The notes: generated from the sequence alone by a model not told the origin. DNA of 64,000 nucleotides from Macrostomum lignano (GCA_002269645.1 NIVC01003471.1:32248-96247); one strand, 5' to 3'; positions 2,572-64,000 are shown, numbered from the stretch's first letter. Program-made: numbers and translations.

Positions 2572-25461
<22,890 letters not shown>

Positions 25462-39398: not shown

Positions 39399-40259
39399 CA
39401 TTGAAATTTCAGTAATTCTCTCTAAGAGTCACTATAGCACTACTACAGCATTATAGCGATTTCCTGCAAGCCTCGACATCGTAGGGATTCCCAAATGAAT
39501 CTCTTAACTTCGACATGAAGCTTCTTTTATTTTTTACATTACGCTTTTTTTATCAGCGATCCCTCCCCTGAGGAGGCATCAAATAATGTAATAAAAAGTT
39601 TTCAATAAACTACATGTAGCTTCTGACTTTAGCCTTGAAATCTCATTTATACCCCCGTGAACCTTGACATCTCAGATATTCCCCCCGTAAGCCTTAACAT
39701 GTCAGCGATGGCCCCCATAAACCTTGAAATCTAAAAAATCCCCTGTTATTCTGTTAACCTTGAAACCCGATAAAATATAACCCTCAACCCACACCTGACC
39801 TAAACCTAACTTTAACCCAACCTAAAGCCTTGAAATCTCAGCAATTCTTCTCCCCTAAGCCTTGACATTTTAGTGATTCCTTCTTTAAGAATCACAGCAC
39901 TATAACGATTTCCACCAAGCTTTGACATCGTAGCAATTCCCAAATGAATCTTTTAACTTGAACATGACTTTTCTTTTATGTATAGCTCGTACATACGCTC
40001 GTAGTGCTACTTTTATTTTTTACATGACTCTTCTTCTATAAGCGCCTCCCGTGGCGAGCCAACAAAGAATGCAATAAAAAAATTGAGTAAAGTACATGAA
40101 CTTTGAAGTAGCTTCTGACTTTTGCTTTGACATCTCAGAAACCCCCCCCCCCGTAATCTCAGCAGTTATTCTCTGAGAGCCTTTACGTCTCAGTTTTTCT
40201 CCCCAGCACAGCATTATAGCTGCATTTAATTTTTGATTTTTATGATTTTCTATGATTTT

Positions 40260-42220
40260 TAAATGACGCTTCTACGATTTTTACATGACGCTTCTATGAT
40301 TTTTTACATGACGCTTCTATGATTTTTTACATGACGCTTCTATGATTGTTTACATGACGCTTCTATGATTTTTTACATGACGCTTCTATGATTGTTTACA
40401 TGACGCTTCTATGATTGTTTACATGACGCTTCTATGATTGTTTACATGACGCTTCTATGATTCTTTACGTGACGCTTTTATGATTTTCACATGACGCTTC
40501 TATGATTTTTTAAATGACGCATCTATGATTTTTATATGACGCTTCTATGATTTTTTAAATGACGCTTCTATGATTGTTTACATGATGCTTCTATGATTTT
40601 TTAAATGACGCATCTATGATTTTTTTACATGACGCTTCTATGATTCTTTACATGACGCTTCTATGATTGTTTACATGACGCTACTATGATTTTTTTACAT
40701 GATGCTTCTATGATTGTTTACATGACGCTTCTATGATTGTTTACATGACGCTTCTATGATTTTTTCATGACGCTTCTGTGATTGTTTACATGACGCTTCT
40801 ATGATTGTTTACATGATGCTTTTATGATCGCTTACATGACGCTTCTATGATTGTTTACATGACGCTTCTATGATTGTTTACATGACGCTTCTATGATTGC
40901 TTACATGACGCTTCTATGATTGTTTACATGACTCTTCTATGATTTTTTACATGACGCTTCTATGGTTGTTTACATGACGCTTCTATGATTTTTACATGAC
41001 GCTTCTATGATTTTTTATATGACGCTTCTATGATTTTTTTAAATGATGCATCTATGACTTTTATATGACGCTTCTATGATTTTTTACATGACGCTTCTAT
41101 GATTGTTTACATGACGCTTCCATGATTTTTTAAATGACGCATCTATGATTTTTGCATGACGCTTCTATGATTGTTTACATGACGCTTCTATGATTGTTTA
41201 CATGACGCTTCTATGATTGTTTACATGATGCTTTTATGATTGCTTACATGACGCTTCTATGATTGTTTACATGACGCTTCTATGATTGTTTACATGACGC
41301 TTCTATGATTGCTTACATGACGCTTCTATGATTGTTTACATGACTCTTCTATGATTTTTTACATGACGCTTCTATGGTTGTTTACATGACGCTTCTATGA
41401 TTTTTACATGACGCTTCTATGATTTTTTATATGACGCTTCTATGATTTTTTTAAATGATGCATCTATGATTTTTATATGACGCTTCTATGATTTTTTACA
41501 TGACGCTTCTATGATTGTTTACATGACGCTTCCATGATTTTTTAAATGACGCATCTATGATTTTTGCATGACGCTTCTATGATTTTTTAAATGACGCTTC
41601 TACAATTTTTTACATGACGCTTCTATGATTGTTTACATGACGCTTCTATGATTGTTTACATGACGCTTCTATGATTGTTTACATCACGCTTCTATGATTT
41701 TTTTACATGACGCTTCTATAATTGTTTACATGACGCTTCTATGATTTTTTACATGACGCTTCTATGATTGTTTACATGACGCTTCTATGATTGTTTACAT
41801 GACGCTTCTATGATTCTTTACGTGACGCTTCTATGATTTTCACATGACGCTTCTATGATTGTTTACATGACGCTTCCATGATTTTTTAAATGACGCATCT
41901 ATGATTTTTATATGACGCTTCTATGATTTTTTTAAATGACGCTTCTATGATTGTTTACATGATGCTTCTATGATTTTTTAAATGACGCATCTATGATTTT
42001 TATATGATGCTTCTATGATTTTTTAAATGACGCTTCTATGATTGTTTACATGATGCTTCCATGGTTTTTTAAATGACGCATCTATGATTTTTATATGATG
42101 CTTCTATGATTTTTTAAATGACGCATCTATGATTTTTATATGACGCTTCTATAATTTTTTATATGACGCTTCTACGATTTTTTACATGACGCTACTATGA
42201 TTTTTACATGACGCTTCTTT
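40260..42220 (+). repeat. ~22-bp minisatellite (acatgacgcttctatgattgttt) inside Helitron copy 1; shorter homologous array at 44050-44750 in copy 2
   Basis: Tandem units; the array length difference accounts for most of the size difference between the copies. Confidence 0.95.
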
Positions 42221-42804
42221 TTAAAAAGTCTTTTAGTTTTCCTGACGTTGAAAAGCTTTAATTAAAAAAATTATACTCTATGAAAATTCGAACCATCGTC
42301 GCTGCATTTAGCAGTTCAGTCTGTTCACCTCTAGGCTAGTTCTCATCTTTTTGATAACATCAAATTTTGCACTTATATATATATATATAATTCAACAGTT
42401 TAAAATCCAAGCATAGAGTAAATCACACGAAGCAGTTATGACATAATCAGTTTCTCAGTCAGTCAGTATCAGTTAACAATATGGTTACGCAATTTAAATC
42501 AAGTCTGGTGCTACGCTTCCACACTGCATTTTCAATTCAAGTCGGAGTTACAATTCAGTGATGATGCAATCTATTTCAGAACCAGAATTCAACCAGTCAG
42601 TTTTTTCTCTAGCATTCTTACAATGCATTTCAAGTCGAAAAGTTTGCTTGACCTTTGCAAAAAAGCATGTTTTTCGAATATTTAATGCCTTTAGCATCGA
42701 GCAATTTCTTAGCCGCGATGCATGTACAGTCACGGGAAAATTTCTGATCGAACAGTGCAAGTTTGAACAAAATCGGTCCAGCCATTTTTTCTCTAATCGA
42801 TCAC

Positions 42805-42841
<37 letters not shown>

Positions 42842-42870
42842 CACAGACAGACCATTTTTAGTATATAGGA

Positions 42871-45381
42871 CTAGCAATCTACGCCCCCCGTTGGGGAGCC
42901 AAAGAAATGCAATACATATTTTTTTAATAAGCTACATGTATCCTTGAAATCTTAAAAAATCTCCTGTCAAACCTTGTAACCCTTGACATGTCAGTAATTC
43001 CCCCCCCCTACAAGCTTTAACATATCAACTTCCCCCCCTTGACATCTCAGCAATGCCCCCAATAAGCCTTGGAAATCTAAAAATATCTGTCAACCTTCTA
43101 ACCCTAACCCTAGCCTAACCCCTAACCCTAACCCTAACCCTAACCCTAACCCTAACCCTAACCTAACCCTAAAGCATTGAAATTTCAGTAATTCTCTCTA
43201 AGAGTCATTATAGCACTACTACAGCATTATAGCGATTCCCTGCAAGCCTCGACATCGTAGGGATTCCCAAATGAATCTCTTAACTTCGACATGAAGCTTC
43301 TTTTATTTTTTTACATTACGCTTTTTTAATCAGCGATCCCTCCCCTGAGGAGGCATCAAATAATGTAATAAAAAGTTTTCAATAAACTACATGTAGCTTC
43401 TGACTTTAGCCTTGAAATCTCATTTATACCCCGTGAGCCTTGACATCTCAGCTATTCCCCCCGTGAGCCTTGACATGTCAGCGATGGCGCCCATAAACCT
43501 TGAAATCTGAAAAATCCCCTGCTAACCTTGAAACCTGATAAAATGTAACCCTCAACCCACACCTGACCTAAACCTAACTTTAACCCAACATAAAGCCTTG
43601 AAATCTCAGCAATTCTTCTCCCCTAAGCCTTGACATTTTAGTGATTCCTTCTTTAAGAATCACAGCACTATAACGATTTCCACCTAGCTTTGACATCGTA
43701 GCAATTCCCAAATGAATCTTTTAACTTCGACATGACTTTTCTTTTATGTATACATAGTGCTACTTTTATTTTTTACATGACTCTTCTTATATCAGTGCCC
43801 CTCCCCGTGGCGAGCCAACAAAGAATGCAATAAAAAAATTGAGTAAAGTACATGAACTTTGAATTAGCTTCTGACTTTTGCTTTGACATCTCAGAAACCC
43901 CCCCCCCCGTAATCTCAGTTATTCTCTGAGAGCCTTGACGTCTCAGTTTTTCTCCCCAGCACAGCATTATAGCTGGATTTAATTTTTCCATGACACCCTT
44001 CATGTCTGACATGACGCTTCTTTTCTTCTACCATGATGCTTCTTAATTTTTTAAATGACACTTTCATTAGTTTTCAAATGACGCTTCTATGATTTTTTCA
44101 TGACGCTTCTATGATTTTAACATGACGCTTCTATGATTTTTTAAATGACGCTTCTATGATTTTTTAAATGACGCTTCTATGATTTTTTACATGACGCTTC
44201 TATGATTGTTTATATGACGCTTCTATGATTTTTTACATGACGCTTCTATGATTGTTTACATGACGCTTCTATGATTGTTTACATGACGCTTCTATGATTT
44301 TTACATGACGCTTCTATGATTGTTTACATGACGCTTCTATGATTCATTACATGACGCTTCTATCATTTTTTAAAATGACGCTTTTATGATTTTTTACATG
44401 ACGCTTCTATGACTGTTTACATGACGCTTCTATGATTGTTTACATGACGCTTCTATGATTTATTACATGACGCTTCTATGATTGTTTACATGACGCTTCT
44501 ATGATTGTTTACATGACGCTTCTATGATTTTTTAAATGACGCTTCTACGATTTTTATATGACGCTTCTACGATTTTTTACATGACGCTTTTATGATTGTT
44601 TACATGACGCTTCTATGATTTTTTAAATGACGCTTCTACGATTTTTATATGACGCTTCTACGATTTTTTACATGACGCTTTTATGATTGTTTACATGACG
44701 CTTCTATGATTTTTTACATGACGCTTCTATGATTCATTACATGACGCTTCTTTTTAAAAAGTCTTTTAGTTTTCCTGACGTTGAAAAGCTTTAATTAAAA
44801 AAATTATACTCTATGAAAATTCGAACCATCGTCGCTGCATTTGGCAGTTCAGTTTGTTCACCTCTAGGCTAGCTCTCATCGTTTTGATAACATCAAATTT
44901 TGCACTTATATAATTCAACACTCTAAAATCCAAGCATAGAGTAAATCACACGAAGCAGTTATGACATAATCAGTTTCTCAGTCAGTCAGTATCAGTTAAC
45001 AATATGGTTACGCAATTTAAATCAAGTCTGGTGCTACGCTTCCACACTGCATTTTCAATTCAAGTCGGAGCTACAATTCAGATATGATGCAATCTATTTC
45101 AGAATCAGAATTCAACCAGTCAGTTTTTTCTCTAGCATTCTTACAATGCATTTCAAGTCGAAAAGTTTGCTTGACCTTTGCAAAAAAGCATGTTTTTCGA
45201 ATATTTAATGCCTTTAGCATCGAGCAATTTCTTAGCCACGATGCATGTACAGTCACGGGAAAATTTCTGATCGAACAGTGCAAGTTCGAACAAAATCGGT
45301 CCAGCCATTTTTTCTCTAATCGATCACATAGATAGATAGATAGATAGATAGACACAGACAGACCATTTTTAGTATATTGGA
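42871..45381 (-). mobile_element. Non-autonomous Helitron, copy 2 (2511 bp), head-to-tail with copy 1
   Basis: Preceded by A, begins TCCAATATACTAAAAATGG, ends with the same hairpin + CTAG abutting the TC of copy 1. Colinear with copy 1 along its length. Confidence 0.82.
43098..43171 (-). repeat. Interstitial (TTAGGG)n telomere-type repeat inside Helitron copy 2
   Basis: About 12 CCCTAA units on the plus strand. Confidence 0.88.
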
Positions 45382-48129
45382 TGAAAGGCCCAGGCGCAGT
45401 GAAGCGTAAGGCAGAAGAGCACAATGGAACCCCTATATAGCTATTAGAGGGGCAAACAGAAGCAGCTTTAAGATAATTAATCAACTGTCAAGTCAATTTG
45501 AATAGCCGAATCTAATAAAGCCCCTTTCCATTCTAGTTAGCAGCAACACCCCGCCGCAGGCACAATGGCGCTCAAACCGGCTGGGAGAAGCAAACTGAGC
45601 AGCAGCCTGACTTAGAGAACAACGCGGCACGCGGCAGACTCTGGCGCACCCTGAGGGAGAAAACGTGAGGCCCACCTACAGATCCTACCCAACCCGAAGC
45701 TGCCCAAGAAGGCGAGATCGACCCCAAACAGCTTGACAACCGAGAGAGAGAAGACTGTCTAATCATCTATGGACAGAGTCAAGAGACGGAAAACTAAGTA
45801 CTTTTTCTATAATCTTTCTATCCCAAAATTTTATCCAACTCAACACATAGATTTTCGAAAGCCCGAATAATCTCTAACCCTCACACTTAGCAACCTACTA
45901 GAACTAACTAAATTCATGTACAACTAGGGGACTGAGTCCCAGATCAGGGGGCTTCGTTTTTCTCGCGCAGTTTTCGATCTCGAATTGCTCCCTTTGAATT
46001 AGTTTCTGGATTATCCAGTTGGCACAAATCTAAGTCTTCAATACAGTTATGTCTTAAGTGTTACGCAGAGCACATCAGAGAAAGAGTCAAACTCAGCTTA
46101 GATGCTAGGAGATCCCGTCAGTTTATACGGTTTTCTCTGACGGCCTGATTGGAGAGATTAGAGCTGTAAGAACCTTAGACCGCTAGACATCTATCTTTCG
46201 AAATTGAGAACACAAACTCAAAGGCCCCAGAGAAAAACGCATATAGCGACTACATGTGTGACAAGTGACAAATAAATCGTGATTTCTGTTGCTATGAAGT
46301 TTGACGGGTCACAAGCATTGACAAGTTAGCTGTAGAATAGTGACCTTGTACTAAACCTTTGCGAACTTTCACCATATGTAGTAAATCTCATTCGAGAAAA
46401 TTCTGCGGTAAATATATTCCAAATATAGTAATTTGAACTCCCGCGCGAACTATTTCTAGAACATCCTTTCTTCCGGAATGTTCCATATGGAAAAACTGTA
46501 AATATAAAGCATCCGCAATCGCACGGTTGCTGCCTATACCGGCCTCTTGCGAACTACCTTGTTTTCAATTTTATTAAACCAATGATATTAAAGAACCACC
46601 GCCTTTAAGCTTCATTTACTTATTTCCGCAACATAGCAAGTGGCAAGTGCCTAGTAACTGTCTCTAGTGTCGTTTCAAACGGTTTGTTGCCTAAGTCTAG
46701 TTATTTTGACAAGTGCCAAGGCTAGTCGTAAGTGACAAGTTTACAAATTATTATTGTCTCAACTCCGTGGCATGGCATCACTACTGACTTGACTTGGTCC
46801 CCAATAAGTTCTAGAATGAGACGTCCGATGAGGATTCTGACTGAGTAGCTATACCCTATACCAGGTTATTATAAGCTGTTTGGATTCATTAATACATGTA
46901 TCGTGGATTGTACCCTTTTGGCAACAATTCAAGCCGGTTTGCCGGCTGTTTTAGATTGCTGCCGGAAAATTAATGGATGCATTTGGCTATAGAAAAACCA
47001 AAACATGACAACGATGTGACGACAGGAACTCCGTTGCAACGCTTGAATGATTCTCCGTTCATGATGTTCACCTGGCGATTGACGGACGGGAAATCCAGGT
47101 GCCGCTGAATGGCCGCACGAAAACAGATGAGAGACTTCGGCGCGTAGTATGTTCCATCCTGCTTTCGAAGAGGCGAATAAAAAAGCCTCAGATAATCGTT
47201 CAGTAATTTTGATCAATACACGCTCAAACTCGTGGCGGAGCCTCTTGGCATTGAGGAACTGGTGGAACCTTGCCGAGTGAACTTTTCGTTGAGTTTCGGT
47301 CCATTTCGGCAGAGATTCATTCTCAATCCGGTCCAGCATTTGCAGATCTTCGCTAGTTGACGACGCATTCAAATTGTTAATCTCCAGAACAAAGGAAGAA
47401 TTAATTTATGACACTTAAAATAGTCGTCTCCACTGTCCTTTCCAATTGCCACAGATTGACTGGTTGTTTTCTGCTCTTGCTCTCAAAGAGCCATAGACAG
47501 CAACCAATCCCGTTAGTCTCCCACAGCGGCTCTGCTGCCATAGATCTAGAAGTTGAAAACTCCTTCCAGATCAATTATTTCAACCCCTCTCCCTCCCATG
47601 AGTGCTGTCAAAAATCGAAATTGAAACATCAGTAGTAAGTAGTGCGATTGGGGCGAAAATATCCGTGTAAAAATTAAAGTTGCTTGCATTATAACTCTCA
47701 AACACATACACAGCTGTCTATGGTCATATGGTCTCTATGGAGTTGCCAGTCTGCTAAAAATAGCTACCAACCAAGCAAGCAAGGACCAATGACTAATTAG
47801 CAACTCAGGACGTTTACACTCAATCAATTGAGTTGTTAAGTAGTCCTTGGCAAGGACTGGTGTGAGAGCTTTAAATAGACAAACTCTAAAGTTTTAACCA
47901 TAGCTAAAAAAGGACATATATGGTATAAATGGGGAATATAAATGGGGAAAGCTAACTGGCATATACCATATATTCCCCATTTATACCAGTGCTAAGGCAA
48001 TAAATGCTTGAGTGACAAGTTTATTGACCGAGGCGAAGCAAACGAATCAGAATCTTTTTCATTAATATTCCACTAATTTTCCAAACAATATTCTACAATA
48101 CAAACTGGCAATCCAACCCTACAAAACTT

Positions 48130-48900
48130 AGGCTTGGATAGCGACTCAGGTGACGAATCATACGTGACTGCATCTGGTGGAGGCTAAAAAGGTCCAGACT
48201 GTGAATCCGCCAGACAACATCGGAGCTAACTGGCATGATACTGCACTCCGGAAACGGATAATCGGCCCAAAGCACTTCCAGAGTTTCTCGGCTCGCTTGG
48301 TCTGCATTCGGATTTTCTTGTGCCGGACAACATTGAAAATTGCATGGCTGCCATCCTTGGTCAATTTCTTCCCGACAGTCTTCTGCAAAGTTTGTGCGCC
48401 TGGACAACCGCCAGAGCAAACAGGGCTGTTACGCAAAGTCAACAAGAAAACGGAGAGCTGCCATGGAAGCTCCTAAATTGGAAGCCTGCATGCAGCCTGA
48501 ATGAAATGCAGTTTATCGGGATTCTGCTGCACATGGGAGTAGTACAGAAGCCAGATATTAGCATGTATTGGTCAACCGATCTTATGCATCATCAGGACTT
48601 CTTCCGCCATGAGTCATCTCACCATGACCTGGTTTCGCTGCTACGATTGCACGGAGGTTAAAGAAGCTGATCCGCTGTGCAAGATCGACCCATTTTAAAC
48701 AAAGTCCAGTCCATCTGTCAAAATAAGTACATGCAACTTCAAAATATTTCTGTTGACAAGTCATTGCTACTTTACAAAGGTAGGCTCCACTTTCTTCAGT
48801 ACATGCCCAACAAAAAGGCAAAGCTCGTCACCAAGCTGTACTGTCCAGCCGAATCGAACAGCGGCTATCTGTGGAACTTTCTGATCCACTCGACTGCAGC
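48130..48900 (+). pseudogene. piggyBac-like (DDE_Tnp_1_7, PGBD4-type) transposase remnant, frameshifted and 3'-truncated
   Basis: FLPDSLL..L..WT, FIGILLHMGVVQKPDISMYWSTD, ISVDKSLLLYKGRLHFLQYMPNK.AK..KLY...ES.SGYLWNF, in different frames. No TIR found. Confidence 0.78.
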
Positions 48901-52105: not shown

Positions 52106-52564
52106 TTTGTGTGGCTACTGTGTAATTTGCGTACAAGGTAAGTGAGCTTAGCATAGTAAGTTTTTGTGCGTTTCAATTTCAATGCGTTTTGAGCAGTGAT
52201 TTTCTAGCATTTAACACAAATCTGATCAGCTCGTGCCGCTGAAGATTTTACTAGTCCGAAATCTCTGCTCAGCTCATTAATAATAAGCCGCTTGAAACAA
52301 AAAGTCAACTAAAAATCTACAGAGGAATGAAACGCACCAAAGCCCCGGGTAAGGAGAAATGCGAAATTAACGACACGAATACAGAGACGAGCGCAAGCAG
52401 AGATCCGGCCTCAGAGAACTGCATGGACGCAAAAATTAAGAACAGAAATCTTCAAAAGAATGAATTAAAAATTTTAAAGATTGCTTTGACTGCATAGTTC
52501 GTTTGCTGCTTTCTATTAAGACGATTTAAACTGAAAAGTAAAGGCGGAGTGCCGGCACAGCCCG

Positions 52565-53060
52565 AGGATCTGAGAGGCTGGCCCAGCAACTGAGGATCTG
52601 AGAGGCTGGCCCAGCAACTGAGGATCTGAGAGGCTGGCCCAGCAACTGAGGATCTGAGAGGCTGGCCCAGCAACTGAGGATCTGGGAGGCTGGCCCAGCA
52701 ACTGAGGATCTGGGAGGCTGGCCCAGCAACTGAGGATCTGGGAGGCTGGCCCAGCAACTGAGGATTTAAGGGGCTGGCCCAGCAACTGAGGATCTGGGAG
52801 GCTGGCCCAGCAACTGAGGATCTGGGAGGCTGGCCCAGCAACTGGGGATCTGGGAGGCTGGCCCAGCAACTGAGGATCTGGGAGGCTGGCCCAGCAACTG
52901 AGGATCTGGGAGGCTGGCCCAGCAACTGAGGATTCGGGAGGCTGGCCCAGCAACTGAGGATCTGGGAGGCTGGCCCAGCAACTGGGGATCTGGGAGGCTG
53001 GCCCAGCAACTGAGGATCTGGGAGACTGGCCCAGCAACTGAGGATATGGGAGGCTGGCCC
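52565..53060 (-). repeat. 28-bp GCCAGCCTCCCAGATCCTCAGTTGCT-family array on the minus strand, downstream of the BTBD9 stop
   Basis: Reverse complement of the GBF1 intron arrays. Confidence 0.93.
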
Positions 53061-53168
53061 ATTGTTAATGAATTATACCTACTTAGCGGCTGAGCCTCAG
53101 TTAGTTACCGTATAATACGAGTTATTACACGAAATACACGGAAACGGTCAAGCTAGGCCAAATAGCGC

Positions 53169-56100
53169 TCACTCAGTAGAGCCAGGCTTGGCAGTGGCCC
53201 AGCTAGGATGGCCATCGTATTGCTGCTGCTGTTGCTGCTGCGAGCCGCTGGGAGCGGCAGAGGCTGCCATCGCCGTGGCGGCAGCAGCAGCGCCACCGCT
53301 CCGCCCGTGCCCAAAGGACACCAGCGAGCTGGACCGGCTCGCCGGGCCGTCCGCCTGGTCTGCCAGCGCCTCCACCGAGCTGGCGCCGTCGCCTTCGTAA
53401 GTCGCTGCCGCCACCGTCGCTGCTGCTGACGTGCCCGAAGCTGCAGGCAGACCCGCCTGCTGCTGCTGCTGCTGAAGCGGCGGCGGCTGCCTCGCCAGGT
53501 GGTCGCGCAGAGCCTGCGGCTCGCACGGGCACTGGAAGTGCACTACGTGGAACACCTCGTTGGCAGTGTTCATGGTGCCGATGATGCGGACGAAGACCAC
53601 TGGCCTGGGGGAGAATGTGATCACCTGCCAGGAGCGACAGGGCGTGCGGCTGGCGTCCCAGACTCGATCCCAGTGCGTCTGGTCGCAGCTGGTGTCCACC
53701 TGGGGGTTAGAGTGGGAGTCCATGTGATATTTTCCTATGTATGGTACACCTGTGACAGGAATTCTATCATGTACACCTGTGATAGGAATTCTATCATGTA
53801 CACCTGTGATAGGAATTCTATCATGTACACCTGTGACAGGAATTCTATGGTGTACACCGGTGATAGGAATTCTATCATGTACACCTGTGATAGGAATTCT
53901 ATCATGTACACCTGTGATAGGAATTCTATCATGTACACCTGTGATAGGAATTCTATGGTGTACACCGGTGATAGGAATTCTATCATGTACACCTGTGATA
54001 GGAATTCTATGGTGTACACCGGTGATAGGAATTCTATCATGTACACCTGTGATAGGAACTCTATGGTGTACACCTGTGATAGGAATTCTATGGTGTACAC
54101 CTGTGATAGGAATTCTATGGTGTACACCTGTGACAGGAATTCTATGGTGTACACCTGTGATAGGAGTTCTATGGTGTACACCTGTGATAGGAATTCTATG
54201 GTGTACACCTGTGATAGGAATTCTATGGTGTACACCTGTGACAGGAATTCTATGGTGTACACCTGTGATAGGAGTTCTATGGTGTACACCTGTGATAGGA
54301 GTTCTATGGTGTACACCTGTGATAGGAATTCTATGGTGTACACCTGTGATAGTAATTCTATCATGCACACCTGTGATAGGAATTCTATGGTGTACACCTG
54401 TGATAGGAATTCTATGGTGTACACCTGTGATAGGAATTCCATGGTGTACACCTGTGATAGGAATTCTATGGTGTACACCTGTGATAGGAGTTCTATGGTG
54501 TACACCTGTGATAGGAATTCTATGGTGTACACCTGTGATAGGAATTCTATCATGCACACCTGTGATAGGAATTCTATCTTGTACACCTGTAATAGAAGTC
54601 CAACTAACAAATGCGAATTCTAAGGAAACGTCCTGGCAGCAACAATCCCAAAAAAAAGACGGCCCACTAACAGTGTAGGAGTAGGCTCTCTGGTCCAGAT
54701 CCCACAGAAGCAGCTGCATGGAGCCGATGTAGTAGGGCTGGGACAACTGCACAACAATGGCGCCATTGCCCAGCTGGTGGCAGGTGTAGCCGGAGTCCCA
54801 GTCGTAATTCTTTGTGTCGCCGTTAATTAGAGCGTTGCGCAACCTGCTAACGCCTTCGATAACGCAGGCGGACTTTGCTACGGTAGCCACATTCTCCTCC
54901 GGCGTTATGAGCCCGTCAGTGAGCACGAACTGGCGTCTGGTGTAGAAAGCCTCCAGCGCCACACAGTGGAACACCCGGTTGACTGTGTTGTGCGTGCCCA
55001 CTATGCGGATGTACCGCACCACCCGCTCGGGGAAGTACAGCTCCTGCCAGCTGCGGCACAGGTAGGCCCGGTGGTCGATCACCTGGACCCAATCCGTCTC
55101 GTTGATGCTCACCTGATGGTGTTGGGGAGGGGGCTATTTATTGAGCCTCACCTTACTATAGTAGCTATGACTCACTTCAATATAGTAGCTATTTGACTCA
55201 CCTCAATATAGTAGCTATTTGACTCACCTCAATATAGTAGCTATTTGACTCACCTCAATATAGTAGCTATTTGACTCACCTCAATATAGTAGCTATTTGA
55301 CTCACCTCAATATAGTAGCTATTTGACTCACCTCAATATAGTAGCTATTTGACTCACCTCAATATAGTAACTATTTGACTCACCTCAATATAGTAACTAT
55401 TTGACTCACCTCAATATAGTAGCTATTTGACTCACCTCAATATAGTAGCTATTTGACTCACCTCAATATAGTAGCTATTTGACTCACCTCAATATAGTAG
55501 CTATTTGACTCACCTCAATATAGTAGCTATTTGACTCACCTCAATATAGTAGCTATTTGACTCACCTCAATATAGTAACTATTTGACTCACCTCAATATA
55601 GTAGCTATTTGACTCACCTCAATATAGTAACTATAGGACCTGGTGTCCTTGTCCCACAGAAGCAGTCGCAGCAGGTTAATGATGGAAGGTTGGCCGAGCT
55701 TTACTACAATGCAGCCATTCTTATCATCTATTGGGTGCCGAGTGAAGCCGCGGTCCAGATCGTAGTTGACGGTGTCCCCGTCCAGCAGGACGACCCGGCA
55801 CTCGCCTTTGGTCACCTGGGCGCCGTGGCGGATAGTGGCCAGGTTTTCCTCGGGCAGCAGGATGCCTCGATACCGGAGTTCGCAGTCCTTGCGAGCGTTT
55901 TTCTCCTGTGGGCGGTTTAAATCAGGTGATTAGAATCCCCAGGCGATTAGAATCCCCAGGCGATTAGAATCCCCAGGCGATTAGAATCCCCAGGCGATTT
56001 AGAATCCCCAATGCGATTAGAATCCTCAGGTGATTAGAATCCCCAGGCGATTAGAATCCCCAGGCGATCAGAATACTCAGGTGATTAGAATCATCAGGCA

Positions 56101-57544
56101 ATTAGAATTTTAGGTGATTAGAATCCTCAGGTGATGGTTAGAATCCTCAGGTGATGATTAGAATCCTCGTGCAATGGCTAGAATCCACAGGTGATGCTCA
56201 GAGTCATCAGGTGATTAGAATCCTCAGGTGATGGTTAGAATCCTTAGGTAATGATTAGAATCCTCAGGTAATGATTAGAATCCTCAGGTGATGATTAGAA
56301 TCCTCAGGTGATGATTAGAATCCACAGGTGATGCTCAGAGTCATCAGGTGATTAGAATCCTCAGGTGATTAGAATCCTCAGGCAATTAGAATTTTAGGTG
56401 ATTAGAATCCTCAGGTGATGGTTAGAATCCTCAGGTGATGATAAGAATCCTCGTGCAATGGCTAGAATCCACAGGTGATGCTCAGAGTCATCAGGTGATT
56501 AGAATCCTCAGGTGATGGTTAGAATCCTTAGGTAATGATTAGAATCCTCAGGTAATGATTAGAATCCTCAGGTGATGATTAGAATCCTCAGGTGATGATT
56601 AGAATCCACAGGTGATGCTCAGAGTCATCAGGTGATTAGAATCCTCAGGTGATGGTTAGAATCCTTAGGTAATGATTAGAATCCTCAGGTGATGGTTAGA
56701 ATCCTTAGGTAATGATCAGAATCCTCGGGTGATGATTAGAATCCTTAGGTAATGATTAGAATCCTCAGGTGATGATTAGAATCCTCGAGTAATTATTTCG
56801 AGACCAGCAACTGTCTAAGGCAGCGAAGCCTCACCTGAATGGCATCTAGCAAGGCATCCGGGCTGATCTGGCCGCTGGGCCGCACGGTGTGAAGCAAGTC
56901 AGACAGACTGATCAGCTCGAGTCGAAGACAGGCATAGATGCTGCGCGCCTCAACAGGCGTCAGTTCGTTTGGCGGACGGGCGAGGCACCAGGCGCGCACA
57001 GCGTTGAATATCTGGCATTCGTCAGCGAAGAAGCTGTCCCGCGAGATGAGCTGCACCAGGGCCTGGCGGGACAGGCTCAGGAAGCCGGCGCTGGCGCTGC
57101 TGACCAGCGACACCTGCTGCTGATGAGGCTGGAGATGCTGAGGCTCAGGGCTGTTCGCTGCGCTGATTGGCTGCAAGGAAGTGAGCATGGAAGGAAGACT
57201 CGGTAAAATCCATAGAACAAAGATCAATTTATTAATAAAGTTGGTTGCTCGGAAATAATTTTGATTCTTTCAAATCAAGCCCATAGAAGGTATTAAAAAC
57301 ATTTAGCCACCTGCTGCTGCTGAGAAGTGTTGAGCACGGACTCAAGAATTTTGCTGGCATTTCGGTCGAGAAACTCCAAACAGGTGGAGCATAGAGACGA
57401 CAGACTGTAGGCAGTAGCCAAATTGTACACCAGCGCTATGTTGTTGTGGGTCAGACTGGCTTTGAGAAACTCGGACAGAGCTGTCTCCAGTTGGACAAAG
57501 TTGAATTGGTGAGCCAGGCCTAGGAGGTCCAAGATGGCGTCCTC
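53169..57544 (-). CDS. BTBD9: BTBD9 (BTB-BACK-two F5/8 type C-like domains), 3' part. Exons 57544-57311, 57170-56835, 55905-55618, 55112-54672, 53699-53169; upstream BTB exon(s) not found in the window
   Basis: LLGLAHQFNFVQLE, ISRDSFFADECQIFNAV, YRGILLPEENLAT, LLLWDKD.RSYSYYIEVS...DW..VIDH..YLCRSWQELYFP, DWDSGYTCHQLG, NTANEVFHVVHFQCP all match BTBD9. All junctions are GT-AG, phase 0. Confidence 0.92.
53745..54600. repeat. 27-bp quasi-palindromic minisatellite (gtacacctgtgataggaattctatggt), ~31 copies, in the last coding intron of BTBD9
   Basis: Tandem units; most contain GAATTC. Confidence 0.96.
55146..55632 (-). repeat. 26-bp minisatellite made of the BTBD9 exon end plus 5' splice site (TAGCTACTATATTGAG|GTGAGTCAAA)
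   Basis: actcacctc occurs at exact 26-bp spacing from 55196 to 55612 (17 copies), plus 2 degenerate distal copies. Confidence 0.95.
55925..56790. repeat. ~19-22-bp degenerate minisatellite (gattagaatcctcaggtgat), BTBD9 intron
   Basis: Tandem units with internal block duplication. Confidence 0.9.
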
Positions 57545-58058
57545 CTATAGAGTTTGTTTTGTGGTTTAATAGGTTTTTAGAGTTTACTAGCAATCTTTGC
57601 CCCCCCCCCAATGGAAAAAGCAATAGAAAAAGCAAACAAAGTATAAGCAGACATGCCACTTTCTTAACTATGGACTATATGAACAAGATATAGGCAATAT
57701 ATGTTCCTGGCGAAATTCAAAAATTGGGGGCATGTTTTTTGAAAATTTGTTTTTTGGCAATTTAAAAGCAATAAAGCTAAAAAATAAATTTATTTGAGTT
57801 TTAAAAAGTTAGAAACATCTATAAAAGCACAAATTATTCACATATAGCCTTATTTTTAATAAAATGATTTGTAGATTATTTGTAGAAATTACTGTAGAAG
57901 CCAGGTAACACATTGGAAGTCCTATAAGGATCAGAAAAATTGCATTTTACTCAGCTTCTACAGAAGCAATTTGGAAAATTCTTTCTTCTCGCATATATGC
58001 CACGATGATACATATTTTAGTGTAATTTCATTGTTCTTTGTCACTTAATAAGCATATA

Positions 58059-59307
58059 TTCAGTTGGGGAGAAAGTTCCCGCAGTTTCTAGAACTTTCTG
58101 TCTAAGAACTTTCTGGGACATTCCAGAGCCCAGCTGTGTGGGTATATATTGAGGGTGGGTGTGTGTGATTCTAACATGCTATTTAAACCAAAGAGATTAC
58201 TCACTAGTCAGCAGCATTATGGATCTCTCTCGGGCCTATATTTGTGGTCTCCTGCTCTACGACTTCAAATCTGGACTGTCAGCCGCAGAATCCAGCCGCT
58301 GCATCAACGCTGCATTTGGTGCGGGTACTGTGTTTGAAAGCACTGCCCAGGACTGGTTTGCGCGGTTTTGCCAGGGAAATTTTAACCTCGAAGATTTGCC
58401 CCAGTCAGGCCATCCCTCCAAGGTTGATGACGACCGGCTGCGCAGACTCGTAGAGGCTGACCCTCGGCAAACCACGCGTGAGTTAGCGCAAGTCCTTGAT
58501 GTAGACCATAAAATGGTCACCAGTCATTTGCATCAGCTGGGCAAGGTGGTACAAGCTGGCACAATGGGTACCCCACCAATTGTCAGATTGGGACAAGGAG
58601 CGCAGGGCAGAGGTGGCCACTTCTCTCCTCTCCTACAGGCGCACGCACAACTGGCTGAAGTCCATCGTTATAGGCAATGAAAAGTGGTGCCTGTACGTCA
58701 ACATCAAATGTCGACGATTATAGGTTGATGCTGACGCGACACCTGAGCTGCAGCCAAAGTCCGGACTCTACCCATGCAAGGTCATGCTGTGCGTGTGGTG
58801 GGACTGCAAGGGCATCATCTACTACGAACTGCTGCCACCCAACACATTGATTATAGCCGACCTATACTGCCAACAGCTAGACCGATTGGCCGCCGCCATT
58901 GCACAGAAGCATCCAAACCATGGCCTGGTACGATTCCTCTATGATAACGCTCGTCCACACACGAGCTAGGGTGACTCGCCAAAAGCTACTGGACCTTGGC
59001 TGGGAATTTGTGCCCCATCCACCATATTCACCAGACTTGGCACCAAGCGACTATCACCTGTTTTTGTCTCTGGCCAACGCCTTGAACAACAAAACCTTCG
59101 CTGATGATGAAGAGCTTGATAACTGGCTGAACAACTTTTTCACTTCAAAGCCAGAGAAATTTTACAGTGATGGTATTATGAGTCTGCCTGAAAAATGGCA
59201 GAAGGTGATCGATTGTGATGGTGATTATTTTGTTTCTTAATTGGCTTTTTTAAAAAACTGTTTGACAGAAAGTTCTAGAAACCGTGGGAACTTTCTCTCC
59301 AACCAAA
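58059..59307 (+). mobile_element. Full-length mariner (Tc1/mariner, DD34D type) element, 1249 bp, in a BTBD9 intron
   Basis: 44-bp TIRs with 5 mismatches (TTCAGTTGGGGAGAAAGTTCCC... / TTTGGTTGGAGAGAAAGTTCCC...); TA duplication at 58057-58058 and 59308-59309. Confidence 0.93.
58219..59240 (+). pseudogene. Inactivated mariner transposase
   Basis: WVPHQL, GNEKW (first catalytic D replaced by N), MLCVWWDCKGIIYYELL, YDNARPH, HPPYSPDLAPSDYHLF. Two frameshifts and an internal stop. Confidence 0.92.
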
Positions 59308-59699
59308 TAGTAAGCATTTGATTTGGATACTGGGTTCACATTTTGTGGTACCATTTTTACCAAAAAATTTAAGTCTAAATATAAGCATATCACATACACT
59401 AATACTATGCAAGTTGATATTTTAATGAAAGAAAACAACTTGACAATTTTTTTCAACAAGGAATTAGCAGTATATTTACTTTTAGAGAAAGACAAGCTGT
59501 TAAAACCCGCGGATTTTGAACCCGGGGAATTCCAATCCCGGAACTATTTTTGCATATTGAGATTAAACTCAAACAAAAACATTTATTAGTTGGGATAGAG
59601 TTAAACATAAAATAGAGTACATTCGTGTAAAATTAGGATTTGGGGCAAACATTGATATTGTTGGCTGGGGTGCTGCGCAGAATGTCAGGAAAACTCTGG

Positions 59700-61330
<1,631 letters not shown>

Positions 61331-61959
61331 AATAGTCTATTTCTTTTCACTCTCATCTGGCCCGTAGCCATGAGCTGGATTCTTTATCTGGCCTTTGAGA
61401 TAAAAATCTGCCGATCCCTGCTTCGAAAGCCAGTTTGTGGGACGTAGTACTATCATGGTTGTTATCATTTCCCATGCTTTAATCACGTCATCTTTCTGGT
61501 CAATTAGCAGCCCTGAGAGAAATTTGTATATCTCCAGCTCCACCACCACAGTCTGCAGCAGTCTAACAACCATGGAAATACGCATTTCTTAGGAGGCCAT
61601 TTAAATTTTAAAGTACCTTATGCGAATCTTAATGTTAAAATTTTTATGGTGTAACTTATTTAGTAGGATTGCATTGTAATAAGTTATTCATTAATTTTTC
61701 GATATTTTTATAAACCATCCCACATCGCCTTGATTTGCCATCCTTGTTTAACTGCTGCAGACTTGTCCATTCAGAGGAAAGGAAAGTGGTTTAAAATTGA
61801 ATCTCTCGCTAAACTGTCTCTCCTCTCCACGCCTCTCCACTCGCGGGGGTGCAGAGAAGGCTATTAAAAAGTTATTCCAAAACACTGTACATTCGCTATG
61901 TACATTCAGTCCTATCGCCTGACCCTTCGTCTGAGCTGGGGGAATGAGTGAGTGAGCGG

Positions 61960-62597
61960 CACAAACAACAGAAAAAGCAGACAAACTTCACATGCTTACA
62001 GTTTCTGTCCTGATTGAGATACAGAGTTGAGACTTTACATGTAGGCAGAGAATGAGTCAATAAAGAATTGTGTCAAATTTGAAGTCAATCGCTTTATTTG
62101 GAGCAAACTTATGGCAGCTGAAAGTTAGTCAATTTTGAAACCCTTTTACACATCTGGGCCCAGATCGGGATCGAGAAAGAGAGGCAGGCGGGCGGAGGTT
62201 GGGGTGGTTGCTACGCTGAAAAAAGCAGCCTAACTTTAAAAGTGCACCGCGCCGTTCAGGATTAACTTTGAAACTCGAAATTTTACATGATTGTTCCAAA
62301 ATAGTTGAAGATTATCTGTGTCAAATTTGAAGAGAATCGGTAAAAGTGGAACGGCGCTATGGAGGATTTAGTGAAAAAATCGCGCATTTTGAGCAGTTTT
62401 TTGTACTTTTAGGTAGGAAGACTCAAATTTAGGAAATTTAAAGGTAGCCTAAGACATTCTCCGTAGTGAGTTTAGGGTGGGTGTAAAATTTGGTGTCATT
62501 TGGTTGAGCGGTTTGGGAGTCCATAGCGATCAAAATTGTCCACACACAGACAGACACACATACACACACACAGAGTTTTGATTTTTATATGTAGAGA
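61960..62597 (-). mobile_element. Probable 5' portion of a second non-autonomous Helitron family; left boundary uncertain
   Basis: Minus strand reads A|TCTCTACATATAAAAATC followed by (TG)n/(TCTG)n, with internal aaatttgaa..aatcgg motifs like those of the 39-45 kb element. No 3' hairpin/CTRR located. Confidence 0.45.
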
Positions 62598-63529
62598 TGT
62601 TTGTTAACAAACTTTGCACTTTAAATTAGTATGAATTTTTGTGAGTTATGCGATTTTAGAAAAACTTAGAAACCATTTATCTTTTGAGTAAAATAAAAAG
62701 TAAAACACAGAAGACTTTCTGTTTTGTAAGTAGTAAAAAATTAGCCTTCTCTAAGGTCTATGAGTCTTAAAATTGACTGTTTGCATTTTCGCATTTAAGA
62801 ACTTTGTTTTTGCAGGAAAAGTATTAAAAATGACTAAACAAATAACTTTTATACTGTCTTGCACTAATAAAAAAGTAAAACAAAAAATTGCAAATAAGTC
62901 AACTTAGACTTTTAAATTCTTTTTATGGTTTTTTTACTTGTTTATTAAATGATGTAAAGCATAAAAAAGTTTTTTTTCTAGAAATTTTTAAAGACTTATT
63001 TGTCTTTCAAAAAGCTTTTTTAAATATATTGTCATTACCCTCTATTGAATGTCCACAGATTTTACCATTTTATCCCACATTTTTAGATTTTGCCTCTTAT
63101 AACTAGGGTGAAGCATAATCAACTGAACATAAAAGTATCATTTTTCGACCTTCTTTTTTGCATAGCAAAAAAGTTTTATATGTAGTGAAATAAAACTACC
63201 CAGAAGTTGTTTAGAACATTTTTTCTTTTAAATGAATGGTCGCTTTACTTTATTGCACAAGTAGAAAAAAAGCTATTGATGATTTTATTTCAAAACGATC
63301 GATGATTCTAGGGTATCTTCAAACCGAACAGGGTATCTGACATTTGGTTTTTGTGTTTGAACACTAATAACTTTTTATTTCTTGTTTGTTTCTTCTGAAA
63401 TATATACAGTGCTGGGCGTTAACTAGTTAATTGTTTAACTAGTTAATTAACTAGTTAAATTTTAAAAAAAATCGTTAAATTTTCGTTAAATTTTTTATGT
63501 ATTAACTAGTTACACTATTTATGTATTAA

Positions 63530-64000
63530 CCCCCACTATACCACTAGACTAACTAATGCCAGGGCGTGGGGTGGCGAGCCCCCCACTATACCACTAGACT
63601 AACAAATGCCAGGGGCGTGGGGGGCGGCCAGCCCCCCACTATACCACTAGACTAACTAATGCCAGGGCGTGGGGGCGGCCAGCCCCCCACTATACCACTA
63701 GACTAACTAATGCCAGGGCGTGGGGGGCGGCTAGCACTATACCACTATACCACTAGACTAACTAATGCCAGGGGCGTGGGGGGCGGCGAGCCCCCACTAT
63801 ACCCACTAGACTAATAATGCCAGGGGCGTGGGGGGCGGCCAGCCCCCCACTATACCACTAGACTAACTAATGCAGGGGCGTGGGGGGCGCAGCCAGCACT
63901 ATACCACTAGACTAATAAATGCCAGGGGCGTGGGGGGGCAGGCAGCCCCACTATACACTAGACTAACTAATGCCAGGGGCGTGGGGGCGCCAGCCCCTAC
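63530..64000 (+). repeat. ~57-60-bp minisatellite (ccccactataccactagactaactaatgccaggggcgtggggggcggccag), running off the window end
   Basis: About 8 units. Confidence 0.9.

What the first reader, a model, noticed from the sequence alone, without database searches (positions are those of the whole stretch)
55113..55632. BTBD9 intron built from 17 perfect tandem copies of its own exon/5' splice-site junction
The 26-bp unit is the last ~16 nt of the exon plus the donor (ATTGAG|GTGAGTCAAA). The spliceosome therefore faces 17 identical consensus donors and 2 degenerate ones in a row. Only the first gives intact BTBD9, because reading on hits an in-frame TGA in the second unit (GTG AGT CAA ATA GCT ACT ATA TTG AGG TGA). 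The most distal donor-like site leaves a residual intron of only 39 nt, suggesting that a tiny ancestral intron grew by amplification of its boundary. The downstream exon itself starts CAG|GTGAGC, another donor-like site. This could be a natural U1 snRNP decoy array, a copy-number-tuned NMD rheostat, or a snapshot of intron expansion (all inference).
Basis: partly seen in the sequence, partly recalled or inferred. Interest (0 to 1): 0.85.

Follow-up and report, generated by a model that had tools for sequence, protein, structure and literature searches.

The report
Splice-junction minisatellite in flatworm BTBD9 intron
One intron of the BTBD9 gene of the flatworm Macrostomum lignano is almost entirely a 26-base tandem repeat copied from its own exon/intron junction, so the true splice donor is followed by 16 identical decoys; this kind of junction-spanning minisatellite is already known from human F7 and IFI6 and from amphioxus 'mirages'.

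Summary
The window is Macrostomum lignano (assembly Mlig_3_7). BTBD9 lies on the minus strand, and its intron at 55617..55113 (505 nt) consists of three parts:
- 17 full 26-nt units (13 identical, 4 with one substitution);
- one 24-nt degenerate unit;
- a 39-nt unique tail.

Each unit is the last 17 nt of the exon plus the first 9 nt of the intron. This gives 17 identical GAG|GTGAGT sites, one real and 16 pseudo. Every downstream site would produce the same premature TGA.

The array is real. A second contig carries the same array, and two further gene copies carry diverged arrays of 590 and 443 nt on the same 3' tail.

The intron position is lineage-specific. Amphioxus, Owenia and Capitella instead have a phase-2 intron 22 nt upstream.

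This is a new member of a known kind, the boundary-spanning intronic minisatellite (human F7 IVS7, IFI6 and CBS; amphioxus 'mirages'). It sits in a genome where roughly a quarter to a third of the sampled sequence is minisatellite.

The annotated proteins use the first donor. I found no evidence for a U1-decoy or NMD-rheostat role, and no RNA data were available to test one. A 200-kb random sample contained one more such array, in a nuclear-receptor gene, so this is not a one-off.

The parts
55618..55905 (-). BTBD9 exon 3 (aa 306-401 of the 724-aa protein), ending ...AGT TAC TAT ATT GAG
   Evidence: tblastn with P0001. Exact junction strings and an in-frame 1830-nt CDS.
55618..55634 (-). Exonic part of the first repeat unit (ATAGTTACTATATTGAG), in phase with the array. 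It codes for (Y)SYYIE.
   Evidence: TRF extends the array to 55634. Identical to the 3' 17 nt of units 2, 9 and 10.
55612..55620 (-). Authentic 5' splice site GAG|GTGAGT (phase 0, after Glu401)
   Evidence: Only this donor joined to 55112 gives the conserved ...YYIE|VSINE.... Used in the annotated proteins PAA89012.1, PAA90979.1 and A0A1I8JCY3.
55176..55617 (-). 17 head-to-tail 26-nt units, GTGAGTCAAATAG[C/T]TACTATATTGA[G/A]. They carry 16 pseudo-donors identical to the real one over at least 9 nt, and over 26 nt for the AGT units.
55588..55590 (-). In-frame TGA, reached if any downstream donor is used or if the intron is retained
   Evidence: ORF 55588..55929. Simulation of all donors.
55152..55175 (-). 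Degenerate 24-nt unit, GTGAGTCATAGCTACTATAGTAAG, shared by all four gene copies
55113..55151 (-). 39-nt unique tail with a C-rich polypyrimidine tract and the acceptor (…GCCCCCTCCCCAACACCATCAG|). Its first 11 nt, GTGAGGCTCAA, resemble both the unit start and the start of exon 4.
   Evidence: Identical in C2147, C168 and C99.
54672..55112 (-). BTBD9 exon 4 (aa 402-548), starting GTGAGCATCAA. Together with the exon 3 end it forms a 7-nt direct repeat, AGGTGAG, flanking the intron.
53700..54671 (-). BTBD9 intron 4 with an internal 27-bp x 31.6 array (53744-54595). The array does not span a boundary.
55906..56834 (-). BTBD9 intron 2 with an internal 20-bp array (55927-56786). The array does not span a boundary.

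Best explanation
This is a boundary-spanning intronic minisatellite, of the type called a 'mirage' in amphioxus.

**Origin (inferred).** A 26-nt segment covering the last 17 nt of BTBD9 exon 3 and the first 9 nt of a short, lineage-specific intron was duplicated in tandem. Replication slippage or unequal exchange is the likely cause, possibly primed by the ATAG found in both the exon and the intron. The array then grew and was homogenised, as ordinary minisatellites are.

**Why the array resembles the exon (inferred).** The exonic half-unit is held constant by selection on the protein. It can therefore re-seed the array, which would explain why the window's copy matches the exon almost perfectly.

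**Splicing (indirect evidence only).** The duplicates lie downstream of the real donor, so they are intronic. They are removed provided the spliceosome pairs the first donor with the single acceptor at 55113|55112. The annotated proteins imply this pairing. The human F7 IVS7 minisatellite behaves the same way, with 5'-to-3' choice of the most upstream of identical sites.

**Consequence of mis-splicing.** Use of any pseudo-donor gives one and the same premature stop, so such products would be non-functional and probably degraded.

**Function.** The array itself most likely has none. It is one instance of the general expansion of M. lignano introns by minisatellites.
For: - **Anatomy.** Units, phase into the exon, tail and stop codon are as described.
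- **Organism and gene.** Macrostomum lignano BTBD9.
- **Four genomic copies with identical flanking exon sequence but different arrays.** The window and C2147 have 17 units of CAAATAGCTACTATATTGAG type. C168 (590 nt) and C99 (443 nt) have a core unit GTGAGTCATATAGCTGCTATACTGAG, 31-nt variants and four degenerate 5' units. All four end in the same two degenerate units and the 39-nt tail. This is the pattern of concerted evolution with edge units left out.
- **Splicing.** Three distinct annotated 724-aa proteins, one per copy type, all use the first donor.
- **Genome context.** Minisatellites make up 35% of the window and 23% of a 264-kb sample. Most introns are a 7-60-nt stub, then an array, then a 3' stub. 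Published figure: 15% simple and tandem repeats (PMC5730564).
- **Not unique.** A nuclear-receptor exon in a random sample is followed by a 33-bp x 24 array whose unit includes the last 7 exon nt plus the donor. A PQ-loop gene intron in the window starts with an array at its first base.
- **Precedents.** F7, IFI6, CBS, LMNB2 and PDGF (PMC1557585); amphioxus mirages (PMC3087553).
Against: - No RNA-level data were available, so exclusive use of the first donor is inferred from annotation only.
- In mammalian in-vitro work with duplicated strong donors, the site nearest the acceptor is often preferred (my recollection of Reed and Maniatis 1986 and Eperon et al. 1993, not checked here). If that applied in this flatworm, the allele would be harmful.
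- The window copy has lost the degenerate 5' units seen in C168 and C99 and is unusually homogeneous. This could equally mean a very recent expansion or some selection.
- The tail start (GTGAGGCTCAA) resembles the exon 4 start (GTGAGCATCAA). Simple boundary slippage in a pre-existing intron does not explain this.
Confidence: 0.75

Rival explanations
1. The intron was born here by tandem duplication of a purely exonic segment of about 28 nt containing AG|GT (the Rogers model). The segment would be ATAGTTACTATATTGAG|GTGAGCATCAA. The upstream copy supplies the donor and the downstream copy the acceptor. The array is what remains of that event after amplification, and the C-rich 3' tract was acquired later.
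For: - The intron position is absent from amphioxus, Owenia and Capitella. These share a phase-2 intron 22 nt upstream that M. lignano lacks.
- The intron is flanked by a 7-nt direct repeat, AGGTGAG.
- The 26-nt unit equals the circularly permuted 28-nt exonic junction sequence with a single 2-nt deletion and no mismatch (GTGAG[CA]TCAA + ATAGTTACTATATTGAG).
- The tail start keeps the 11-nt spacing, GTGAGGCTCAA against GTGAGCATCAA, 9 of 11 identical.
- Duplication-born introns are documented elsewhere (PMC3265369, PMC4974935).
Against: - The last 20 nt of the intron (CCCCTCCCCAACACCATCAG) have no counterpart in the exon.
- Val-Ser is conserved in BTBD9, so GTGAGC at the exon start is only a codon choice, with a chance of roughly 0.1.
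- By my estimate, the extra TCAA match has a chance probability of a few per cent.
- A 26-28-nt intron would probably have been too short to splice at birth.
Confidence: 0.15
2. The array is a regulatory device. It could be a U1 snRNP sink, or a copy-number-dependent leak into nonsense-mediated decay. It could also be a chain of recursive splice sites, since every unit boundary reads AG|GTGAGT. In that case any donor-to-boundary splice would remove whole units and regenerate the same junction.
For: - There are 16 pseudo-donors in an identical context, and all of them give one PTC more than 50 nt upstream of the last exon junction.
- Unit boundaries match the recursive-site motif at the sequence level.
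- In IFI6 and CBS the first two pseudo-sites are used constitutively (PMC1557585).
Against: - There is no conservation of unit sequence or number between the four gene copies.
- Comparable arrays without splice motifs fill most neighbouring introns and intergenic DNA.
- Only 11 of 208 array orientations carry GTRAG in most units.
- No transcript evidence was found.
- The units lack a convincing polypyrimidine tract for acceptor use.
Confidence: 0.07
3. The intron is a copy of a mobile 'introner'-type element, or an assembly artefact.
For: There is a short direct repeat at both ends. A second intron (nuclear-receptor gene) ends in a very similar GCCCCCTCCCCCAAC..CAG.
Against: - A 78-nt probe of the array finds only the four BTBD9 copies in 764 Mb.
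- The 3' motif pattern finds only these copies plus the one nuclear-receptor intron.
- The 5'+3' pattern finds the BTBD9 copies plus one other locus.
- Two contigs assembled the same 17-unit array, and two more carry homologous arrays.
Confidence: 0.03

Closest known systems
Human F7 intron 7 37-bp VNTR (Borensztajn et al. 2006, PMC1557585)
   Same: A minisatellite whose first monomer spans the exon/intron boundary, so the authentic donor is followed by strictly identical pseudo-donors. Copy number is polymorphic. Only the most upstream site is used.
   Different: In F7 the unit holds 4 exon nt and 33 intron nt, with 5-9 copies and a weak donor (UGG|gugggu). Here the unit holds 17 exon nt and 9 intron nt, there are 17 copies, and the donor is near-consensus (GAG|GTGAGT). 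Splicing behaviour was tested in F7 and has not been tested here.
Human IFI6 (6-16) intron 2 and CBS intron 13 minisatellites (cited in PMC1557585)
   Same: The authentic donor is followed by many reiterated pseudo-sites: 25 in IFI6, and 15-20 repeats in CBS.
   Different: [quoted passage not shown] Whether that happens here is unknown. If it did, the product here would be truncated.
Amphioxus 'mirages' (Adh3, globins BflGb6 and BflGb9; PMC3087553)
   Same: [quoted passage not shown] Length differs between haplotypes. Evolution is concerted, with edge units excluded. They have been proposed as a source of novel intron positions.
   Different: The amphioxus units are 10-160 bp and are found at either boundary. 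The organism here is a flatworm and the array spans the 5' boundary. This intron is itself at a non-ancestral position.
Intron gain by tandem duplication of an AGGT-containing exon segment (Rogers model; PMC3265369, PMC4974935)
   Same: A lineage-specific intron flanked by a direct repeat that includes AG|GT. Most of the intron is derived from junction sequence.
   Different: The 3' 20 nt of this intron are not exon-derived. The duplication here may have happened inside an already existing short intron.
Recursive (ratchet) splice sites of long Drosophila introns (from my own knowledge, not checked here)
   Same: A juxtaposed AG|GTRAGT motif at every unit boundary.
   Different: The resemblance is in sequence only. 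The units are 26 nt long and lack a clear polypyrimidine tract. No RNA evidence exists.

Membership tests
Boundary-spanning intronic minisatellite ('mirage' / F7-IVS7 type) | Head-to-tail array of units of about 10-160 bp inside an intron | tested here: met
   Period 26, 18.8 copies, 97% matches. 17 matches against 0 expected.
Boundary-spanning intronic minisatellite ('mirage' / F7-IVS7 type) | The first monomer spans the exon-intron boundary, so the splice site is reiterated | tested here: met
   17 exon nt plus 9 intron nt per unit. 17 identical GAG|GTGAGT sites.
Boundary-spanning intronic minisatellite ('mirage' / F7-IVS7 type) | Length and sequence differ between alleles or copies, with homogenised core units and divergent edge units | tested here: met
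   Introns of 505, 498, 590 and 443 nt in C3471, C2147, C168 and C99. Core units are copy-specific and the last two units plus tail are shared.
Boundary-spanning intronic minisatellite ('mirage' / F7-IVS7 type) | Normal mRNA is made from the authentic (most upstream) site | tested here: inconclusive
   Three annotated 724-aa proteins use it. No transcript reads or fragments could be examined.
Intron created by tandem duplication (Rogers model) | The intron is absent at that position in outgroups | tested here: met
   Amphioxus, Owenia and Capitella have a phase-2 intron in the Arg codon 22 nt upstream and none at E|VS. No other flatworm could be examined.
Intron created by tandem duplication (Rogers model) | The whole intron is derivable from the duplicated exon sequence around an AG|GT | tested here: inconclusive
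   The units are derivable with one 2-nt deletion. The 3' 20 nt are not.
Introner / transposon-derived intron | Many near-identical copies in unrelated genes | tested here: not met
   The array probe hits only the four BTBD9 copies. Terminal-motif patterns give 5 hits each genome-wide.
Recursive splice site array | AG|GTRAGT at internal points, used as both acceptor and donor | not testable with these tools
   The motif is present at 16 boundaries. Its use would need lariat or intermediate RNA data.
U1 decoy / NMD rheostat | Pseudo-site occupancy or use changes the output of the gene | not testable with these tools
   Only the predicted common PTC is shown.

The most novel reading that the evidence does not exclude
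The BTBD9 intron may be a caught-in-the-act example of intron birth, or relocation, by tandem duplication of an exon segment around a proto-splice site. More generally, junction and stub amplification may be a recurrent route by which Macrostomum introns arise and grow. This would help to explain three things: four of the five BTBD9 introns seen in the window are at non-ancestral positions; almost every intron carries a minisatellite; and roughly 1-3% of arrays in a 264-kb sample reiterate a real 5' splice site.
Probability: 0.18. Interest if true: 0.7.

Novelty: new member of a known kind. Interest (0 to 1): 0.35.

Why it matters
This is an extreme natural test case for 5' splice-site choice. 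There are 17 donors in a row, and the AGT-type units are identical to the true junction over a full 26 nt. The animal can be studied with transgenes and RNAi. It also carries three to four versions of the same gene, with 9, 15 and 17 donors.

The finding also shows that the 'mirage' phenomenon, so far described in amphioxus and in a few human genes, occurs in a flatworm whose introns are generally inflated by minisatellites. It links that phenomenon to an intron at a lineage-specific position, which bears on how introns grow and perhaps how they arise.

It does not reveal a new kind of element.

Tried and rejected
- **Transcript evidence.** I searched the 5.8-billion-protein collection with exon 3 plus exon 4 for partial or mis-spliced Macrostomum products. 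The best hits were 67-72% identical proteins of other animals, and none was from Macrostomum.
- **Dispersed-family (introner) idea.** The array probe and two terminal-motif patterns found only the BTBD9 copies plus one locus each, so I rejected it.
- **Genome-wide excess of tandem donors.** AGGTRAGT three times at 10-30-nt spacing gave 10,365 matches against 5,009 for the reversed control. These are matches, not arrays. Of about 9 arrays inspected, most were not at exon junctions and one was antisense to a gene. The two-fold excess cannot be interpreted.
- **Other introns in the window.** I asked whether the other BTBD9 introns or the GBF1-like gene's introns span boundaries. They do not; their arrays start 7-90 nt inside the intron.
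- **Proximity to ancestral introns.** I considered whether it is meaningful that each non-ancestral intron lies close to an ancestral one. I rejected this, because ancestral introns are only about 40 codons apart.
- **RNA families.** An Rfam scan of the window found nothing.
- **Failed look-ups.** Lingula and Priapulus gene look-ups failed. The 2015 genome paper is not held.
- A first donor simulation was off by one base. It was redone correctly.

Full report
**What is there.** On the minus strand, 55617..55113 is a 505-nt intron between two coding exons.
- TRF reports one array at 55147-55634: period 26, 18.8 copies, 97% matches.
- The unit GTGAGTCAAATAGCTACTATATTGAG occurs 17 times head to tail with at most one mismatch. 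None is expected by chance.
- Unit by unit, 13 units are identical. Units 2, 9 and 10 read AGT instead of AGC. Unit 17 ends GAA.
- A 24-nt degenerate unit and a 39-nt unique tail ending CCCCCTCCCCAACACCATCAG follow.
- The last 17 nt of the upstream exon (ATAGTTACTATATTGAG) are in phase with the array and identical to the AGT units. The first repeat unit is therefore half exon, half intron.
- The result is 17 identical GAG|GTGAGT sites, followed by GAA|GTGAGT and AAG|GTGAGG. The last of these leaves a 39-nt residual intron.
- The downstream exon starts GTGAGC.

The one exception is that four of the '17 perfect' units carry a single substitution.

**Gene and organism.**
- The best protein match is BOX15_Mlig010289g1 of Macrostomum lignano. 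BTBD9 of many animals follows at 56-60% identity, and the protein has BACK and two F5/8-type-C regions.
- The genome behind the window has 764 Mb in 5,269 contigs. This fits the published Mlig_3_7 assembly of 764,424,962 bp in 5,270 scaffolds (PMC5730564).
- The exons in the window give an uninterrupted 609-aa C-terminal part: 57544..57311, 57170..56835, 55905..55618, 55112..54672 and 53699..53169. It is identical to UniRef A0A1I8JCY3 over residues 116-724.
- Joining the first donor to 55112 gives ...SYSYYIE|VSINETDW..., which aligns without gaps to amphioxus, Owenia and Xenopus BTBD9.
- Using any of the 19 downstream GT sites, or retaining the intron, gives the same ending...SYYIEVSQIATILR*. 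The TGA is at 55590..55588.

**Is it real?**
- A 78-nt probe of the array finds four places in the genome and no others. All four are BTBD9 copies.
- Contig C2147 is 99.3% identical to the window over 5.7 kb. It has the same 17-unit array with the same variant positions, apart from a 7-nt deletion in unit 2.
- C168 and C99 have identical flanking exon sequence but introns of 590 and 443 nt. Their core unit is GTGAGTCATATAGCTGCTATACTGAG, with 31-nt variants and four degenerate units next to the exon.
- All four copies end in the same two degenerate units and the same 39-nt tail.
- Several copies are expected, because the sequenced DV1 line carries duplicated chromosomes and the assembly holds 180-312 Mb of duplicated blocks (PMC5730564).

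The pattern is copy-specific homogenised cores with shared, unhomogenised edges. That is the signature of minisatellite turnover by slippage and unequal exchange. It also shows that the array predates the divergence of the copies.

**Context.**
- Minisatellites of 20-50 bp cover 35% of the window and 23% of a 264-kb sample made of the window plus 200 kb taken at arbitrary positions.
- In the neighbouring Sec7-domain (GBF1-like) gene, almost every intron holds an array. The same is true of BTBD9 introns 2 and 4. These arrays begin 7-90 nt after the donor and stop 20-60 nt before the acceptor.
- The typical intron here looks like a short intron inflated from within.
- Only 11 of 208 array orientations carry GTRAG in most units. 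Three of these sit on a real 5' splice site:
  - BTBD9;
  - a PQ-loop gene intron at 27989, whose array starts at the first intron base without any exon part;
  - in the random sample, a nuclear-receptor zinc-finger exon followed by a 33-bp x 24 array whose unit contains the last 7 exon nt plus GTGAGA.
- The BTBD9 array is therefore a rare but recurrent outcome, in which the duplicated seed happened to include the donor.

**Age and origin of the intron.**
- Amphioxus, Owenia and Capitella BTBD9 share a phase-2 intron in the Arg codon of DTR|SYSYY. None has an intron at E|VS.
- M. lignano lacks that ancestral intron and has its own 22 nt downstream, in phase 0.
- Of the five introns in the window, only the one before Glu116 coincides with an outgroup intron (Capitella 110/111). 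The intron is therefore lineage-specific at the depth I could test.
- It is flanked by the direct repeat AGGTGAG.
- The 26-nt unit equals the junction sequence ATAGTTACTATATTGAG|GTGAGCATCAA, circularly permuted, with one 2-nt deletion.
- The tail begins GTGAGGCTCAA, which matches 9 of 11 positions of the exon 4 start.

These features keep alive the idea that the intron was created by tandem duplication of an exon segment (Rogers model). However, the last 20 nt of the intron have no exonic counterpart, and the extra similarity has a chance probability of a few per cent. I rank this idea second. The simpler reading is slippage at the 5' boundary of an already existing intron of about 40 nt.

**How it most likely works.**
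- Shown: the structure, its variation between copies, the common PTC, and the annotated use of the first donor.
- Inferred: the array is a passenger, and the spliceosome picks the most upstream of the identical sites, as demonstrated experimentally for human F7 IVS7 (PMC1557585).
- In IFI6 and CBS the first two pseudo-sites are also used (same paper). Some leak into a PTC-containing isoform is therefore possible here.
- Every unit boundary reads AG|GTGAGT. A splice between two boundaries would remove whole units and regenerate the junction. This is a curiosity that RNA data could test.
- Nothing in the sequence data supports a decoy or rheostat function. Unit sequence and number are not conserved between gene copies.

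**Comparison with what is known.**
- Minisatellites whose first monomer spans an exon-intron boundary are documented in human F7, IFI6, CBS, LMNB2 and PDGF (PMC1557585).
- In amphioxus Adh3 and globin genes they are called 'mirages' and have been proposed as a source of new intron positions (PMC3087553).
- The present case meets the structural criteria of that class.
- It is not a member of a dispersed introner family.
- I found no paper in the held library describing such arrays in Macrostomum.

**Verdict.** The functional speculation is unsupported. This is a new member of a known kind. Its interest is moderate: it is a clean natural substrate for studying 5' splice-site choice and intron growth in a tractable flatworm.

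Noticed in passing
window 27989-28205 (+): The intron of a PQ-loop (cystinosin-like) gene starts with a 26-bp array at its very first base. GTGAGT is followed by six or seven GTGAGG pseudo-donors, with no exon sequence in the unit. Directly after the array lies a palindrome of telomere repeats, CCCTAACCCTAAGG…GGTTAGGGTTAGGG.
   Followed up: partly
L048 2092-2917 (-), = G000:C13:302092-302917: A nuclear-receptor zf-C4 exon (Pfam E = 3e-23) ends ...GACACAG|GTGAGAGC. It is followed by about 24 copies of a 33-bp unit that ends in the same GACACAG and starts GTGAGAG. This is a second boundary-spanning array, found in a random 200-kb sample.
   Followed up: partly
window 55113-55135 and L048 about 2038-2060: The BTBD9 intron and the nuclear-receptor intron end in nearly the same motif, GCCCCCTCCCC(C)AAC..CAG|G. 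A pattern built from the two finds only these loci in the whole genome. This may be chance, shared branch-site and polypyrimidine preference, or common origin. It is unexplained.
   Followed up: partly
window 7900-21400 (+): In a Sec7-domain (GBF1-like) gene, almost every intron contains its own 21-64-bp minisatellite of 0.2-0.9 kb. The arrays start 20-90 nt after the donor. Overall 35% of the window is tandem repeat.
   Followed up: partly
window 53169-57544 (-): Four of the five BTBD9 introns in the window are at positions not shared with amphioxus, Owenia or Capitella, and at least six ancestral introns are missing. Only the intron before Glu116 matches (Capitella 110/111).
   Followed up: partly
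window 9862-10130, 13203-14005, 23265-24140, 52564-53061: The same 28-bp minisatellite family (CCAGCCTCCCAGATCCTCAGTTGCTGGG and variants) occurs in at least four separate places, in both orientations. It lies in introns of one gene and downstream of another, so it is a dispersed array family.
   Followed up: no
window 10214-10356 (+): A 48-bp repeat in three copies (96% matches) lies inside an open reading frame of the GBF1-like gene. It encodes a 16-aa repeat (…[16 protein letters not shown]…), so it is a coding minisatellite.
   Followed up: no
window 40248-45487: Two 23-bp arrays of the same family (86 and 33 copies) flank near-identical 0.5-kb segments (42422-42931 and 44945-45487). This suggests a tandem segmental duplication of about 2.5 kb. 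An interstitial telomere-type repeat, (CTAACC)x12.7, lies at 43098-43172.
   Followed up: no
window 3045-6977 (-), 58153-59240 (+), 48239-48661 (+): Three transposable-element remains. The first is an uninterrupted 1311-aa retrotransposon polyprotein ORF (RT, RNase H, integrase). The second is a frameshifted mariner/Mos1-like transposase inside the BTBD9 intron upstream of Glu116. The third is a piggyBac-like transposase fragment.
   Followed up: partly
window 57545-64000: The exons for BTBD9 residues 1-115 (the BTB domain) are not in the window. They must lie more than 6.4 kb upstream, beyond a mariner remnant and a 1.4-kb TC-rich low-complexity tract (59745-61176).
   Followed up: no
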